Of a DNA stretch of 64,000 nucleotides, positions 23,896 to 28,876 are shown one piece after another. Where the stretch lies: contig RQSC01000028.1 of the NCBI GenBank assembly GCA_013416795.1, positions 995,568 to 1,059,567 of the forward strand, given 5' to 3'. The notes under the pieces are model-generated. The model ran no database searches. It was not told the DNA's origin and saw only the letters and a program-made list of their open reading frames with translations. The stretch comes from Prasinococcaceae sp. CCMP 1430. Its lineage: Eukaryota; Plantae; Prasinodermophyta. The position numbers and the translations under genes are program-made. Numbering within the stretch: position 1 is the first letter of the stretch; each line of letters starts with the position of its first letter.

Positions 23896-26313
23896 ATGGC
23901 GGAGGCGGCGCAGCAGCTGCAGCTGGTGGACCGCGGCGGCGCGTGCGACGAGGGCGCGCTGGGCGAGTTCTGCGGCGGAGCGGGACGCGTGGGCGTCGCA
24001 GGCCACGCGTACGCCGTCGTGGCCGTCATGGGGCCGCAGTCGAGCGGCAAGAGCACGTTGCTCAATGCGCTGTACGGCACGCGCTTCGTGGAGATGGACG
24101 CCATGAGTGGACGCGGGCAGACCACCAAGGGCATCTGGCTGGCGCAGGCGGTGCCAGCGCAGGCCGGCGGCGTGCTCCCGCTCGTGATGGACCTCGAGGG
24201 CACCGACGGGCGTGAGCGCGGCGAGGACGATGCCGCCTTTGAGGCGCAGAGCGCGCTCTTCGCGCTGGCAGCTGCCGACGTCCTGCTGGTCAACATGTGG
24301 ACGCACGACGTCGGTCGCGAGCACGGCGCCGGCAAGCCGCTGCTGAGGACGGTGCTGCAGGCCCACACTCGGCTGTTCGCGCCGACGAAGCGCTCCACGC
24401 TGCTCTTCGTGCTGCGCGACAAGACGCGCACGCCGGTGGAGAGGCTCGAGGAAATACTGCGCGAGGACCTCAACGCCATCTGGGAGGGTGTGACGAAGCC
24501 TGATGACAGGCAGGACGCCGCGCTTGCGGACTACTTCGACGTGCGCGTCGCAGCTCTCTCAAGTCTTGAGCACGCCGAGGACGCCTTCCGCACCGACGTG
24601 GCGGCGCTGCGCGCCCAGGTGGACGGCTACATTGCCGACGCCGCCGCGCGCCAGGCGCACGTGCCCGGAGACGCCTTTGCGCTCAGCACCAAGTCCCTGT
24701 GGGACCAGGTGGCCGCAAACGACGACCTCAACCTCCCCGCGCACAAGGTCATGGTGGCGACTGTGCGCTGCGCGGAGATCGCCAGCGCCCAGCTCGCACT
24801 GCTGCAGGCGGACGAGGACGTGGCCGCGATGGTGGCGAGGGCGATGGGCGCTAATGTCCCAGACTTTGGGGTTGTCCTGAGTGCGGCGGTGGACGCCGCC
24901 CAGGAGGCCTACGACGAGGACGCAAAGTACTATGATGCCGCGGTGTCGCAGGCAGCGCGTGAGAAGTTGCGCAAGGACGCTTTCGCTGCCTTCTCCCGCG
25001 CGCACGGCGCTCAGCTTCGCTTCGCGGCCGCGGCCGCGGAGGAGAGGCTTGTGGAGGATCTCAAGGCCGTCGGCGAGGAAGGCTTTGCCGACGCCGCTGC
25101 GGCGGCTGTCGCGCGTTGCCTGGAGACATTCACGGAGGCTGCGGTGGCGGCCGAGCCCCAGGGCTCGGGCTGGGAGCACACGGAGGCCTACCGCTCGCTA
25201 GTAGACGCCACCAAGACGCGGGTGCACGCTGCGACTGAAGCGCTGGTGGACCGTGCGACTACTGATGCGCGCGGAGCGGTGCGCGAAGTGCTCGAGCCTG
25301 CCGTTGCTGCCCTCCTGGAGGATCTGCCTGACGATCTATGGGAGCAGATCCGCGAGGTCGTCGCTAAAGCCGGGGTCGAGGCGAGCGATCTCGTGCGCTC
25401 AAAGATCGAGGGCGCAGGCGTCGACGCGCAGGCCATCAAGAAAGCGTGTGCAGCGGCAGAAAAGCACGCGCGCGATCTCGCAGAGGAGCTCGTTCGCCGC
25501 GCATCTAAGTCCGCGGCGGCGCTTATGCGCGACCGCTTCTCCGCTGGCTTTCACCGCGACGAGCGCGGCTTGCCCCGCACCTGGGGCGCCTCAGACGACG
25601 TCGCCAGTGTTGCCGAGGCGGCGCGCCGCTCGGCGGCGAAGGCTCTCTCGATCATGGCTCTCCTGCGCCTCGATACGAGCGCAACTAGCGCGGAGTCGGA
25701 GGAAGCAATTACCCGCGCCACCTCCGCACTTGCCCGAGGCGAGACTGGGGCGTGCTCGGGGCTGGCGTGGAAGGGTGTGGATGCGTCGGTGGTACTCCTG
25801 CAGCCTGCCGCGTGCCGGCAGGCGTGGAAACGCTTCGACTCGGACGCCGCAGCGCAGGTGTCGCAGGCGTTGGCAGCGCAGGAGGCGCGCCGCAGCGCCG
25901 CAGGCGTGCCAGCGTGGGCTATCGTGGCCATGCTTGTGCTCGGCTGGAACGAGCTGTGGGCTTTGCTGACCAATCCGTTGCTGCTTGTCTTCGTCGCTGT
26001 GCTCGCATACGTCGGCTCGAAGCTGTGGATCGAGCTGGACGCGCAAGAGAAACTCAAGAAGGGCCTCATTCCTGGCGTCGTCCTCCTTTCGTGCGAGGTG
26101 GTGCCCGCGCTCACCAGGCTGATGGGCGAGTGGCTCAGGGCGATGGCGGACAGCGCAGAGGCGGCGGGACAGGTTGACATCGCCGGCGCCGCGGGCAAAG
26201 CAAAGGTGGAGCCGCCCGTCGAGCGCCATGCAGGAAATGCTGAGTCTATCGCCACAGCCGGAGGGGGCGGCAACAGCGATGGCGTGCGGCGGCGAACCAA
26301 GCGTGCCGACTGA
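23896..26313 (+). CDS. RHD3: RHD3/SEY1 atlastin-like ER-fusion GTPase
   Basis: GPQSSGKSTLLN P-loop, RGQTTKGIW, DLEGTDGRERGEDD, NMWTHDVGRE, LNLPAHKVMVATVRC, and a C-terminal TM hairpin. Confidence 0.96.
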   Translation: MAEAAQQLQLVDRGGACDEGALGEFCGGAGRVGVAGHAYAVVAVMGPQSSGKSTLLNALYGTRFVEMDAMSGRGQTTKGIWLAQAVPAQAGGVLPLVMDLEGTDGRERGEDDAAFEAQSALFALAAADVLLVNMWTHDVGREHGAGKPLLRTVLQAHTRLFAPTKRSTLLFVLRDKTRTPVERLEEILREDLNAIWEGVTKPDDRQDAALADYFDVRVAALSSLEHAEDAFRTDVAALRAQVDGYIADAAARQAHVPGDAFALSTKSLWDQVAANDDLNLPAHKVMVATVRCAEIASAQLALLQADEDVAAMVARAMGANVPDFGVVLSAAVDAAQEAYDEDAKYYDAAVSQAAREKLRKDAFAAFSRAHGAQLRFAAAAAEERLVEDLKAVGEEGFADAAAAAVARCLETFTEAAVAAEPQGSGWEHTEAYRSLVDATKTRVHAATEALVDRATTDARGAVREVLEPAVAALLEDLPDDLWEQIREVVAKAGVEASDLVRSKIEGAGVDAQAIKKACAAAEKHARDLAEELVRRASKSAAALMRDRFSAGFHRDERGLPRTWGASDDVASVAEAARRSAAKALSIMALLRLDTSATSAESEEAITRATSALARGETGACSGLAWKGVDASVVLLQPAACRQAWKRFDSDAAAQVSQALAAQEARRSAAGVPAWAIVAMLVLGWNELWALLTNPLLLVFVAVLAYVGSKLWIELDAQEKLKKGLIPGVVLLSCEVVPALTRLMGEWLRAMADSAEAAGQVDIAGAAGKAKVEPPVERHAGNAESIATAGGGGNSDGVRRRTKRAD

Positions 26314-26410
26314 GGGGCGCTCTGCTCGCTGCCCCCCACCGCACTTTCGTAAACGAAGCGTGCACCGAAATTTCACAGGGGAATTTACACATTGCACAGC
26401 TGATCTTCCT

Positions 26411-27019
26411 TCAGAGCTCTATGGGTGAGCCAGGCAACGGCGCCTCTCGCGAGGCAGCTGCCGCAACCGTGGCCATCGGCACCCCCGCCTCCGCAGCGAG
26501 CCTCGCGCAGTCGTCGTACTCAGGCTTTGCACTCACGACGGCGCCGTGTAGCGCGGCGACCTTGACGCGCACCACGCCGTATTGCGTTTGCACTGTCTCC
26601 ACGCGGCGCGGGGCGGACAGCCGCTCAACGCGCTGCACACGCACACCGAGCGTGGTCGTTTCGGCGACCATCACCGCCGCGAGCCCCTCTGCCATGTCGT
26701 CCCCATTTCCGCTGTCGCAGAGTGCATGCAGGAACATCGCCGGCCGACCCTTCTTCATGACGCCGTGCGTGACCCACGCATCGAGCGCGCCGGCCGCGAG
26801 CAGCGCATCGATTGCATGCGCAGCGGCTTCCCCGGTGCAGTCGTCCAGGTTGCACTCCAGCTCCGTCAGCACCTCCGACTGTAGCCCGCCAACGGCGCCC
26901 GCGCCCACCGCCCGCGCGCGCCGGCGTGGGCGCCCCTGCGCGAGACGTTGCGAGCGAGACCGCCGCGGAGGCCCCGGTACAGCCGCGCACGCCGCGACCC
27001 GCGCGCGCGCGCGCAGCAT
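26411..27019 (-). CDS. larC: LarC (NPN cofactor nickel insertase) C-terminal domain only, with a transit-peptide-like N-terminus
   Basis: ELECNLDDCTGE...LLAAGALDAWVTHGVMKKGRPAMFLHALC...ETTTLGVR...VQTQYGVVRVK...AKPEYDDCARLAAEAGVP matches the LarC/DUF111 C-terminal motifs. The leader MLRARARVAACAAVPGPPRRSRSQRL is Arg/Ala-rich. Confidence 0.85.
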   Translation of the reverse strand: MLRARARVAACAAVPGPPRRSRSQRLAQGRPRRRARAVGAGAVGGLQSEVLTELECNLDDCTGEAAAHAIDALLAAGALDAWVTHGVMKKGRPAMFLHALCDSGNGDDMAEGLAAVMVAETTTLGVRVQRVERLSAPRRVETVQTQYGVVRVKVAALHGAVVSAKPEYDDCARLAAEAGVPMATVAAAASREAPLPGSPIEL

Positions 27020-27239
27020 GCCGCGCGCGATGCGGAACCTGCGGCCACCGTGAGCGCCGCCCACACAGCGGGTACCACGCGCTCTCTGCCACACCCGGGC
27101 CAGCCCCGCCCACCCTTGTTGCGTGCACGCCGAGCGCGCGCGCGCTCTGGCGCCGGCACTGGCACACTCCGCACCGCGGTGTTTCTGGGTAGAAAAGAAT
27201 CGACAGATGAATTCAAAGAATCGACAGTTTGCACAGGCC

Positions 27240-28876
27240 TCAAACGAGGCGCTCCATGTAACGCATGGCATCGAACGGCGGTCCGTGGCCGTCCTTGAAG
27301 GGCGACGCCTCGCTGCGGATGGCACGCCGCACCTCATCCATCTCACCGCGCTCGCGGCCGATGGCGCGGGCGATAGGCTGCCGGAAGCGCGGATCTCGCA
27401 TGTAGTGCGCCGACAGTGTGGGGGCCGGCAAGTACCCCCTCGCGAGCTTGTGCTCACCCTGCGCGCCAGCCTCAACTGCAGAGCGCGCGAAGTCGCGATG
27501 ACGGGTCAGCACGCGCAGCACGCTGGTCTTTTGAGAACCCTGGCACGCATGCCATGCGCGCGGCGACGCACCCCTGTCGAGCCCGAGATCGATCGCCGCG
27601 GCGATGGCCTCATAGTAGCAGACACACATGTGGAGCCCCTTCACTTCGAGGCCAGGCTTGCAGCCCCAATTCCGTCCGTACAGGCCCTCGGCGCCGACGA
27701 TGTTGAGCGCTGCGGCCACCACTTCGCCACTCTCGTCCTCCTGTGCGACGACGAGCATCACACTGTCGCCCATGGCCTCAGACAGGCCCAGAAAGAACTC
27801 GCGAGTGAGGTAAGCTCTTCCCCACTTCCTCGACGTCGTATCTTGGTAGAAGGTGTAAAAGGCCTCCCAGAGCGCGGGCGTGATCTCTGTGCCGCGCAGC
27901 CGCCTACATGAGTAACCCGCGCGAGCCACTCCGCGCCTCTCCTTTCGAATCGCGTTGCGGCGTTTCTGAGTGAGCGCGCCGAGGAAGTCGTCGAACGACG
28001 TATACTGGGTGCCGTCCGCCTTGGCGTTATGCCAGTGGTACTGCATGCCGGTGCGCAGCAGCATATCCGGTTTAGGGCCGCCGCGGCCACGGCCGTCGCC
28101 CGTCAGTGTGCTCGCGTCATCTTCCGAGCAAAAAGTGATATGGACGGAGGACGCGCTGTACTCGTCGGCCAGCCATGCCATCCCCCGCGCGAGCGCGGAG
28201 GCAGTCGCCGCTGGCGCGCCCTCGCGGACAAGGACGCGAGGGCCGGTGACAGGTGTCATGGGCACGCAGCACTGGAGTTTTGGGTAATAGGGGCAGTCAT
28301 GGTCATCGTAGAACTGATGTCGGTGTGGTGGGCATTGAGGAACAGGAGGGGGGGACGGGGGGAGGGGAGAAGGGCGCGTTAGGATGCCGCTCGTCAACGC
28401 CCGCGCTGGTGCTGGCGCGCGCCGGGGAGAGCACGGACCTGCGCCCAGCCCTGGTCGAACACGTACTCCCCCATGGAGTGACCCTTGAGATACAGTGGTA
28501 CCACGCCAAGCACCTCGTCGTTCCCCGCGTCTCTGGCGACAAGATGGGTGGGCAGCCACCCCCTGTCCCGGCAGACGCTGCCGGACGACTCGAGAAGCCG
28601 CATGAAGGCGTGCGAGAGGAACGGGTTGCTGCCGCGCGCGCCCGGCCGCGCGCACGCATCCCACACCTCCGGATCGAGCTCATCAATAGCAGAGATTGCT
28701 CCCACGCTGATCTGCGCGAGCGCCTTGTCTTCGTCCCCGCCTGAAGAGAGCGAGAGGTCCGCACCGCCGGCCGCCTGTGGCGCACGCTGCCTGAGCCTGT
28801 GCCCGCGGCGCCGCTGCGCGCGCGCAGGGGAGCCCGCAGCGCGCGCCGCGACGCGCGAGAGCGCCTCCACCATCAT
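27240..28876 (-). CDS. DUF482 / FemAB-like GNAT-fold acyltransferase, probably plastid-targeted; two introns (about 28314-28438 and 27476-27571)
   Basis: NPFLSHAFMRLLESSGS, PLYLKGHSMGEYVFDQGWA, YYPKLQCCVPMTPVTGPR, SFDDFLGAL..KRRNAIRKERR, LYGRNWG, CYYEAI, VEAGAQGEHKLARGYLP. Confidence 0.92.

What the first reader, a model, noticed from the sequence alone, without database searches (positions are those of the whole stretch)
26411..27019. Stand-alone LarC C-terminal (CTP-binding) domain with an organellar transit peptide in a eukaryote
Seen: a 202-aa ORF made of an Arg/Ala-rich leader and only the C-terminal LarC domain. There is no N-terminal domain or His-rich nickel-binding tract, and the upstream neighbour is DUF482. 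Known: LarC is the CTP-dependent nickel insertase of the nickel-pincer nucleotide cofactor pathway (LarB/LarE/LarC, LarA racemases); some bacteria split it into LarC1 and LarC2. Inference: either a split, plastid- or mitochondrion-localised NPN pathway in an alga, or a repurposed nucleotide-binding domain.
Basis: partly seen in the sequence, partly recalled or inferred. Interest (0 to 1): 0.7.

Follow-up and report, generated by a model that had tools for sequence, protein, structure and literature searches.

The report
Stand-alone algal LarC2 nickel-cofactor subunit
A marine green alga carries an intact nuclear gene for only the CTP-binding half (LarC2) of the bacterial enzyme that puts nickel into the nickel-pincer cofactor. 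The gene has an added N-terminal leader that may send the protein to an organelle, so this is a sound but only moderately novel lead to an unstudied nickel pathway in phytoplankton.

Summary
The minus-strand ORF 26411-27019 (202 aa) is a complete LarC2 domain and nothing else. It matches Pfam PF01969 columns 239-374 of 375 and the NCBIfam LarC2 model end to end. It is 40% identical to the solved L. plantarum LarC2, and the predicted fold agrees (target TM 0.90). It keeps all 21 invariant or near-invariant family positions.

The gene is nuclear and correctly assembled. It lies between an intron-containing DUF482 gene and RHD3/Sey1. An independent contig set and a TARA Oceans scaffold (98.7% identical) show the same gene order. 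No LarC1, LarB or LarE lies in the 64 kb.

The 44-residue Arg/Ala-rich, acid-free leader is required to reach the only usable ATG. It is predicted disordered. It tolerates an in-frame 11-codon indel. Equivalent leaders occur in related stand-alone LarC2 genes, including Chlorokybus. Stramenopile LarCs have none. Targeting itself is untested.

This scan already noted a LarC1-only gene and a LarB homologue elsewhere in this genome (AI notes, not re-tested here). LarE and LarA remain unknown.

Lar genes in unicellular eukaryotes and stand-alone bacterial LarC2 are both known. I class this as a new member of a known kind, interest about 0.4.

The parts
26411..27019 (-). LarC2 gene: single-exon CDS of 202 codons plus TGA stop
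   Evidence: ORF and sequence. Pfam PF01969 E 2e-44. NCBIfam LarC2 E 4e-41. A gene caller found the same start on TARA scaffold L001.
26888..27019 (-). N-terminal leader, codons 1-44: Arg/Ala-rich, no acidic residue, candidate organellar targeting peptide
   Evidence: Composition and 84% GC against 67% in the spacer. pLDDT 57-68, meaning disordered. No other in-frame ATG lies before the domain. Equivalent leaders occur in L002, P0146, P0151, P0212 and Chlorokybus P0143.
26414..26887 (-). LarC2 catalytic domain, residues 45-202, including the NLDD and MKKGRP motifs
   Evidence: PDB 6bwo E 9e-23. AF2 pLDDT above 95. Foldseek hit 6bwq_B with target TM 0.90 and rmsd 1.8 A. All 7 invariant and 14 near-invariant columns are kept. 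Predicted trimer ipSAE 0.78 against a best control of 0.00.
26943..26981 (-). 39-nt segment of the leader that other sources replace by 6 nt (an in-frame 11-codon length polymorphism)
   Evidence: The X9 contig skips 26943-26981 and has 6 letters between. L001 has the same 33-nt net gap, giving the 191-aa form P0286.
27020..27239 (-). 220-nt spacer between the DUF482 stop and the LarC2 ATG. It must hold the DUF482 3' end and the LarC2 promoter and 5'UTR, unless the two genes are co-transcribed.
   Evidence: Sequence. No RNA contig bridges it. Its function is inferred.
26385..26389 (-). TGTAA pentamer 22 nt after the stop: candidate polyadenylation signal
   Evidence: Sequence. TGTAA as the green-algal poly(A) signal is my background knowledge and was not tested for this alga.

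Best explanation
This is a functional nuclear gene for a free-standing LarC2 subunit. Like bacterial LarC2, it would assemble into a trimer-of-dimers (hexameric) core. The composite pockets at its subunit interfaces would bind CTP and CMPylate the pyridinium-3,5-bisthiocarboxylate mononucleotide precursor. A separately encoded LarC1 would then insert nickel to give the nickel-pincer nucleotide cofactor. LarC1 lies on another piece of the genome, so the two halves must act in trans with no covalent linker and no frameshift fusion. The 44-residue basic leader most likely imports the protein into a plastid or mitochondrion. Shown here: domain identity, fold, residue conservation, nuclear location, conservation in wild populations, and presence in an RNA library. 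Inferred: the oligomer, CTP use, the partnership with LarC1, and the targeting.
For: HMM matches lie far above the curated cutoffs. The protein is 40% identical to solved LarC2 and has the same predicted fold. All 21 invariant or near-invariant positions of a 106-sequence LarC2 alignment are kept, including N57, D59, D60, K89, K90, R92, G125, R127 and E167. The predicted homotrimer scores 0.78 against a best control of 0.00. That mark was reached by 21 of 30 proteins solved as pairs of one chain and 0 of 23 solved as single chains. The three runs agree in at least 96% of their contacts, and partner pLDDT is at least 88. The interface includes residues 80-89 and 124-136. Between the window and a 98.7%-identical TARA population, the domain has 4 synonymous changes and 1 conservative change (D107E), and the leader has an in-frame indel. 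A 61%-identical relative on GC-72% marine contigs has the same architecture. A marine metatranscriptome holds a 216-nt contig of the CDS that carries two of the TARA synonymous variants. The same run holds spliced contigs of the neighbouring gene. A bacterial precedent for trans-acting halves exists: an Anaerolineae larE-larB-larC2 cluster with no adjacent larC1. Earlier notes of this scan report LarC1-only and LarB genes in this genome. The mechanism follows PMC13510736.
Against: I could not fetch or test the LarC1, LarB, LarE or LarA of this genome, so the partners rest on AI notes, and no note mentions LarE or LarA. In fused Moorella LarC, deleting or altering the interdomain linker strongly reduces activity (PMC13510736), so a linker-free pair is not guaranteed to work the same way. 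Two culture-derived, transcriptome-like runs showed no LarC2 contig (a gap proves nothing). The exact protein is absent from the 15-billion-protein collection although its neighbour RHD3 is present, so the gene appears unannotated. The RNA contig has no intron and could be carried-over DNA. The trimer pass may be the model's memory of 6BWO. The leader's composition is also what GC-rich DNA yields by default, and its codon-position GC shows no coding periodicity.
Confidence: 0.68

Rival explanations
1. It is a working LarC2 subunit but cytosolic. On this view the N-terminal extension is not a targeting peptide: it is a disordered tail, or translation starts at a non-AUG codon nearer the domain.
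For: Stramenopile LarC and LarC1-only proteins start directly with the catalytic domain, which suggests a cytosolic pathway there. The leader's codon-position GC shows no coding periodicity, and its Arg/Ala/Gly/Pro bias is the default product of 84%-GC DNA. No targeting predictor was available.
Against: The only in-frame ATG that yields a complete domain is 44 codons upstream. The indel between populations is a multiple of three. Acid-poor leaders of 45-70 residues recur, without sequence similarity, in at least five related stand-alone LarC2 genes and in Chlorokybus. A leaderless eukaryotic LarC2-only clade shows that such an extension is not automatic.
Confidence: 0.2
2. It is a repurposed or orphan LarC2-like nucleotide-binding protein, for example a PII-like sensor, that no longer serves nickel-pincer cofactor synthesis.
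For: Its ferredoxin-like half resembles PII/SbtB nucleotide sensors (ranks 4-40). Stand-alone LarC2-like proteins of unknown role exist in archaea (MK0293, PDB 3c19). LarE and LarA are unreported for this genome.
Against: All LarC2-specific invariant residues are retained. The NCBIfam equivalog-domain score is 139.7 against a cutoff of 50. LarC1 and LarB are reported in the same genome.
Confidence: 0.09
3. It is a decaying or silent relic of a horizontally acquired bacterial gene, or bacterial contamination or misassembly.
For: The protein is missing from public protein sets for this organism. No contig appeared in two culture-derived runs. The nearest labelled prokaryote relatives, Anaerolineae and an Anaeromyxobacter MAG, are 51-54% identical.
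Against: The ORF is intact, and the substitutions between populations are mostly synonymous. The same DUF482-LarC2-RHD3 order is seen in an independent contig set and in a TARA scaffold. The flanking genes are eukaryotic, one of them with two GT..AG introns seen spliced out in RNA. An RNA-library contig lies on the CDS.
Confidence: 0.03

Closest known systems
LarC2 domain of Lactiplantibacillus plantarum LarC (PDB 6BWO/6BWQ/6BWR) and of Moorella thermoacetica LarC (12bi)
   Same: Same domain, 40% identity, with target TM 0.86-0.90 and rmsd 1.8-2.1 A. The same invariant motifs are present, and it is predicted to oligomerise.
   Different: In L. plantarum, LarC2 is joined to LarC1 by a programmed frameshift. 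In Moorella it is joined by a 13-residue linker that is needed for activity (PMC13510736). Here it is a separate nuclear gene, unlinked from LarC1, with a 44-residue leader.
Stand-alone bacterial LarC2 (NCBIfam NF052512), e.g. an Anaerolineae MAG with a larE-larB-larC2 cluster
   Same: A free LarC2 polypeptide of about 150 residues, 54% identical, presumably acting in trans with a LarC1.
   Different: The bacterial gene sits in a lar operon and has no leader. The algal gene has no lar neighbour within 64 kb.
Chlorokybus atmophyticus 209-aa LarC2-only protein (EukProt, P0143) and unnamed marine eukaryote homologues (P0146, P0151, P0212, L002)
   Same: Stand-alone LarC2 with a 45-70-residue acid-poor N-terminal extension. 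A single clade of these with the window protein is not rejected (p-AU 0.674).
   Different: Only 45-61% identical. The free tree does not join Chlorokybus to the Prasinoderma group. None has been studied.
Stramenopile LarC ('Nickel insertion protein' of Phytophthora, Ectocarpus, Nannochloropsis, Tribonema, Hondaea; LarC1-only proteins of pennate diatoms)
   Same: Eukaryotic nuclear LarC genes already in the databases. Oomycetes have a characterised NPN enzyme, the GntE of P. nicotianae (PMC11770544).
   Different: Mostly fused LarC1-LarC2, and they start directly with the catalytic domain, so they have no leader.
MK0293 of Methanopyrus kandleri (PDB 3c19)
   Same: A free-standing LarC2-like protein (E 5.5e-11).
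   Different: Much more distant (33% identity, TM 0.55-0.61), archaeal, and of unknown function.

Membership tests
LarC2 (CTP-binding domain of the NPN cyclometallase LarC) | Sequence match to the curated family models above their cutoffs, over the whole domain | tested here: met
   NF052512 scores 139.7 bits against a cutoff of 50, profile 2-118 of 118. PF01969 scores 152.7 bits against 22.1, columns 239-374 of 375.
LarC2 (CTP-binding domain of the NPN cyclometallase LarC) | LarC2 fold: a ferredoxin-like N-terminal part plus a C-terminal protrusion | tested here: met
   AF2 mean pLDDT 88.8, above 95 for residues 45-200. Foldseek gives 6bwq_B at E 9e-15, target TM 0.90, rmsd 1.8 A.
LarC2 (CTP-binding domain of the NPN cyclometallase LarC) | Conserved pocket residues (NLDD, MKKxRP and GVR motifs) | tested here: met
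   All 7 invariant and 14 near-invariant columns of alignment A1 (106 sequences) are present. I could not map them onto the CTP contacts because the 2018 structure paper is not held.
LarC2 (CTP-binding domain of the NPN cyclometallase LarC) | Homo-oligomer (hexamer of two trimers) that forms composite CTP sites | tested here: inconclusive
   Three copies score ipSAE 0.78 against a best control of 0.00. The mark was reached by 21 of 30 proteins solved as pairs of one chain and 0 of 23 solved as single chains. The pass may be the model's memory of 6BWO, and the hexamer was not modelled.
LarC2 (CTP-binding domain of the NPN cyclometallase LarC) | CTP binding and CMPylation of P2TMN | not testable with these tools
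   Biochemical assay needed.
Nickel-pincer nucleotide (Lar) biosynthetic system | A LarC1 partner encoded in the same genome | not tested
   Absent from this 64-kb window. Reported on another piece by note s1-389845. My attempt to fetch it returned only stramenopile and bacterial proteins.
Nickel-pincer nucleotide (Lar) biosynthetic system | LarB, LarE and an NPN-using enzyme (LarA/GntE, NphT-type or other) in the same genome | not tested
   A LarB homologue is reported only by first-reader note s1-396526. No note mentions LarE or LarA. None lies in the window.
Organellar (plastid or mitochondrial) transit peptide | An N-terminal extension absent from prokaryotic homologues, basic, acid-free and unstructured | tested here: met
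   44 residues with 12 Arg and no Asp or Glu. pLDDT 57-68. Bacterial LarC2 starts at the domain.
Organellar (plastid or mitochondrial) transit peptide | Predicted or observed import and cleavage | not testable with these tools
   No targeting predictor was on hand. The composition is confounded by 84% GC.

The most novel reading that the evidence does not exclude
Green-lineage algae (Prasinodermophyta, Chlorokybus and several uncultured marine picoeukaryotes) may share an old, organelle-located nickel-pincer cofactor pathway. In it, LarC1 and LarC2 would be separate, unlinked nuclear genes that must cooperate without the interdomain linker that fused bacterial LarC needs. The pathway would feed a still unidentified NPN-dependent enzyme, a third use of nickel in marine phytoplankton beside urease and Ni-SOD.
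Probability: 0.3. Interest if true: 0.65.

Novelty: new member of a known kind. Interest (0 to 1): 0.4.

Why it matters
Nickel behaves as a nutrient in the sea, and the known algal uses are urease and Ni-superoxide dismutase. A working nickel-pincer pathway in picoalgae would add a further demand for nickel and point to an unknown NPN-dependent enzyme. I found no open paper that discusses this pathway in algae.

Mechanistically, the 2026 cryo-EM study concluded that the LarC1-LarC2 linker is important for activity. A natural pair of unlinked halves, possibly imported separately into an organelle, is a ready-made test of that model.

The gene also seems to be missing from public protein sets for this alga, so it is an annotation gain.

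On the other side, Lar genes in unicellular eukaryotes are acknowledged in the literature (PMC11770544) and are widely annotated in stramenopiles, and free-standing LarC2 has its own NCBI model. The surprise for a specialist is therefore moderate.

Tried and rejected
1. Looking for the missing half nearby. tblastn of seven LarC1 domains, and of LarE and LarB from an Anaerolineae cluster, against the window and five eukaryotic contigs gave nothing below E 0.15.

2. Fetching this alga's LarC1 through the LarC1 region of Tribonema. The best 120 hits were all stramenopile or bacterial. A look-up of earlier findings by sequence was blank.

3. Finding named green-algal LarC2 through the Chlorokybus protein. 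Only bacterial and unnamed hits came back.

4. Reading the CTP-contact residues from the 2018 JBC paper and two reviews. None is held, so I used family-wide conservation instead.

5. ESM Atlas feature search. It only returned bacterial PF01969 clusters.

6. A cyanobacterial (endosymbiotic) origin. No cyanobacterium appeared among the labelled relatives. The 150-column tree is too weak to name a donor.

7. A functional link to the DUF482 neighbour. The adjacency is kept only in the near-identical TARA population and not in L002, L005 or L007, so it is probably incidental.

8. Bacterial locus L008 as a model of a 'split' LarC. Its LarC1 ORF ends in out-of-frame-looking sequence, so it is probably an assembly frameshift.

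9. Codon-position GC as a test of leader translation. It was uninformative.

10. A literature query with optional terms was badly designed and returned irrelevant papers.

Full report
**The observation**

The minus strand carries an ORF that stays open from 27475. The first ATG that is not inside the upstream gene is at 27019, and the stop is at 26413-26411, giving 202 residues. Pfam PF01969 (Ni_insertion) matches at E 2e-44, but only with residues 45-185 against profile columns 239-374 of 375. NCBIfam has a dedicated model for the free C-terminal half, NF052512 'nickel pincer cofactor biosynthesis protein LarC2'. It matches end to end (2-118 of 118) at 139.7 bits against a cutoff of 50.

The solved LarC2 of L. 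plantarum (6bwo) is hit at E 9e-23. Full-length Moorella LarC (12bi) is hit only over its residues 255-406.

**Is the missing half an artefact?**

No. The same-strand upstream gene ends 220 nt before the ATG. It is DUF482/FemAB_like.

Marine metatranscriptome contigs skip 27476-27571 and 28314-28438, with GT..AG ends on the minus strand. The three resulting DUF482 exons, searched one by one by reference, cover Pfam columns 2-78, 80-307 and 310-368. Downstream, RHD3/Sey1 converges on LarC2.

A 5.6-kb contig from a separate run of the same organism label spans RHD3, LarC2 and DUF482. A TARA Oceans metagenome scaffold (L001) is 98.7% identical over 4865 nt and has the same three genes in the same order. 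Seven LarC1 queries, and LarE and LarB from a bacterial cluster, find nothing in the 64 kb.

The gene is therefore nuclear, eukaryotic and truly stand-alone. Earlier notes of this scan name the organism as the green alga Prasinoderma coloniale. I did not verify that name independently.

**Is the domain intact?**

I aligned 106 LarC2 domains from the exhaustive search. The window protein has all 7 invariant residues (D59, G77, K89, R92, G125, R127, E167) and all 14 near-invariant ones (N57, D60, A78, D80, M88, K90, P93, R133, R138, T145, G148, K153, P166, A175).

AlphaFold2 gives pLDDT above 95 for residues 45-200. Foldseek places the model on 6bwq_B and 6bwo_A with target TM 0.90 and 0.86, and rmsd 1.8 and 2.1 A.

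Three copies are predicted to associate: ipSAE 0.78 against a best control of 0.00. That mark was reached by 21 of 30 proteins solved as pairs of one chain and by 0 of 23 solved as single chains. The runs agree in at least 96% of contacts, and partner pLDDT is at least 88. The interface includes the conserved stretches 80-89 and 124-136. This fits the composite CTP pockets at subunit interfaces described for LarC2 (PMC13510736). Because the LarC2 hexamer is solved, this pass may be the model's memory, so I count it as consistency only.

**Selection and expression**

Against the TARA population, the domain shows four synonymous changes and one conservative change, D107E. The C-terminal tail has L195S. 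The leader has V8A plus an in-frame 33-nt length difference.

A marine metatranscriptome holds a 216-nt contig on 26443-26658. Its two differences from the window (26555, 26627) are two of the three TARA synonymous variants in that span. The same run holds spliced contigs of the neighbouring gene, so it contains mRNA of this alga. The LarC2 piece has no intron, however, and cannot by itself be told from DNA.

Two small culture-derived runs cover the RHD3 3' end but not LarC2. The exact 202-aa protein is not in the 15-billion-protein collection, although RHD3 from the same locus is there, with MMETSP, EukProt and UniRef as sources. The only near-identical entries are two TARA-derived ones: P0136, a 108-aa fragment, and P0286 of 191 aa. 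The gene thus appears to be unannotated.

**The leader**

Residues 1-44 hold 12 Arg, 11 Ala, 5 Gly, 4 Pro and no acidic residue. They are predicted disordered. No in-frame ATG lies between codon 1 and the first strand of the domain at about residue 46, so an extension is obligatory unless initiation is non-AUG.

The window carries 39 nt (26943-26981) where the other organism-A run and the TARA scaffold have 6 nt. That is a net 11 codons, in frame.

The nearest non-self relative is 61% identical and sits on GC-72% TARA contigs L002-L004. Its frame is open upstream to an ATG that adds about 70 Arg/Ala-rich residues. Other stand-alone homologues carry dissimilar but equally acid-poor extensions of 45-65 residues. 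These are P0146, whose contig also encodes eukaryotic ribosomal protein L6e, together with P0151, P0212 and P0261. The Chlorokybus atmophyticus protein (209 aa, EukProt) carries one as well.

By contrast, stramenopile LarC and LarC1-only proteins begin directly with the catalytic domain. A eukaryotic LarC2-only clade (P0188, and P0205 on a contig with SNF2 and bromodomain genes) has no leader either.

This pattern favours a lineage-specific targeting peptide. Two caveats remain. Any 84%-GC stretch encodes Arg/Ala/Gly/Pro, and the leader shows no codon-position periodicity. No predictor or experiment was available, and I cannot choose between plastid and mitochondrion.

**Relatives and origin**

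The exhaustive search found 7027 homologues at E up to 0.001. In a 158-row tree, the window protein, P0286 and L002 form a supported clade (SH-aLRT 98). That clade joins P0146/P0151 and P0212/P0261 only weakly (SH-aLRT 80). Chlorokybus falls elsewhere in an unresolved region.

I then constrained all nine leader-bearing stand-alone sequences into one clade. The constraint is not rejected (p-AU 0.674), and the constrained tree had a log-likelihood 23.8 higher than the quick free tree. This does not show a clade, and part of the group was chosen after I had seen the tree.

The best labelled prokaryote relatives are Anaerolineae/Chloroflexota and an Anaeromyxobacter MAG, at 51-54% identity. No cyanobacterium appeared, but the method is not a proper test of donor.

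**How it would work**

Following the current model, LarC2 CMPylates P2TMN with CTP, and LarC1 then inserts Ni and releases CMP (PMC13510736). I propose that the algal LarC2 forms the hexameric core and cooperates in trans with a separately encoded LarC1.

I could not re-test these. No note mentions LarE or LarA.

A bacterial precedent for unlinked halves exists. An Anaerolineae MAG has larE-larB-larC2 with a free LarC2 and no adjacent larC1. In L. plantarum, in contrast, the two ORFs are fused by a programmed frameshift. In Moorella, altering the 13-residue linker strongly lowers activity. Unlinked algal genes exclude a frameshift fusion, which makes the pair a natural test of how far the linker is needed.

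**What is already known**

The literature states that NPN-biosynthetic genes and LarA homologues occur in some unicellular eukaryotes. It also states that all eukaryotic LarA homologues fall in the gluconate 2-epimerase branch, with the Phytophthora nicotianae enzyme characterised (PMC11770544).

My searches show LarC widely annotated in stramenopiles. It is fused in Ectocarpus, Nannochloropsis, Tribonema, Hondaea and the oomycetes. It is LarC1-only in the pennate diatoms Pseudo-nitzschia, Fistulifera and Cylindrotheca. New NPN-dependent enzyme families are still being found (PMC13524815).

I found no open paper that links the nickel-pincer pathway to algae. I therefore class this as a new member of a known kind. 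What is new is the green-lineage setting, the unlinked genes and the leader.

**Verdict**

- Real gene, real LarC2, correctly described.
- The split-pathway reading is the best one (0.68).
- Organellar targeting is plausible but unproven.
- Pathway completeness is unknown.

Noticed in passing
window 27240-28876 (-): The DUF482/FemAB_like neighbour is a three-exon gene (28876-28439, 28313-27572, 27475-27240). Its two GT..AG introns (125 and 96 nt) are seen spliced out in a marine metatranscriptome. Its first 63 residues precede the domain and are Arg/Ala-rich, so it may also be organelle-targeted.
   Followed up: partly
window 26943-26986: This 44-nt stretch inside the LarC2 leader also matches, with one mismatch, another genomic contig and two transcript contigs of the same organism label. 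39 nt of it are absent from the other run and from the TARA scaffold. It looks like a short sequence copied in from elsewhere, or a local assembly difference, and it stays in frame.
   Followed up: partly
window 26313-26411: The stops of the convergent RHD3/Sey1 and LarC2 genes are only 98 nt apart. RHD3 transcript contigs reach 26330-26377, and a TGTAA lies at 26385-26389 on the LarC2 strand. The two 3' UTRs therefore nearly touch.
   Followed up: no
L002-L004 (TARA and other marine metagenome contigs, GC 71-72%): An unidentified, very GC-rich marine organism encodes a 61%-identical stand-alone LarC2 with a leader of about 70 residues, next to amidase and fatty-acid desaturase genes. It may be a second prasinodermophyte-like lineage.
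   Followed up: partly
P0333, P0344, P0414, P0426, P0384; L029:4392-5102: Pennate diatoms (Pseudo-nitzschia, Fistulifera, Cylindrotheca) have LarC1-only proteins that end exactly at the domain border. A leaderless LarC2-only clade sits on eukaryotic contigs. LarC therefore seems to be split in some diatoms too, while centric diatoms, brown algae and oomycetes keep it fused.
   Followed up: partly
L008:7238-8435: A bacterial 'LarC1 + LarC2' gene pair 8 nt apart on a 206-kb contig has a LarC1 ORF whose last 40 or so residues look out of frame. The split there is probably an assembly indel or a frameshift site, not two genes.
   Followed up: no
L009:4388-6477: An Anaerolineae MAG has an overlapping larE-larB-larC2 cluster with no larC1 next to it. 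It is a clean bacterial example of a free-standing LarC2.
   Followed up: partly
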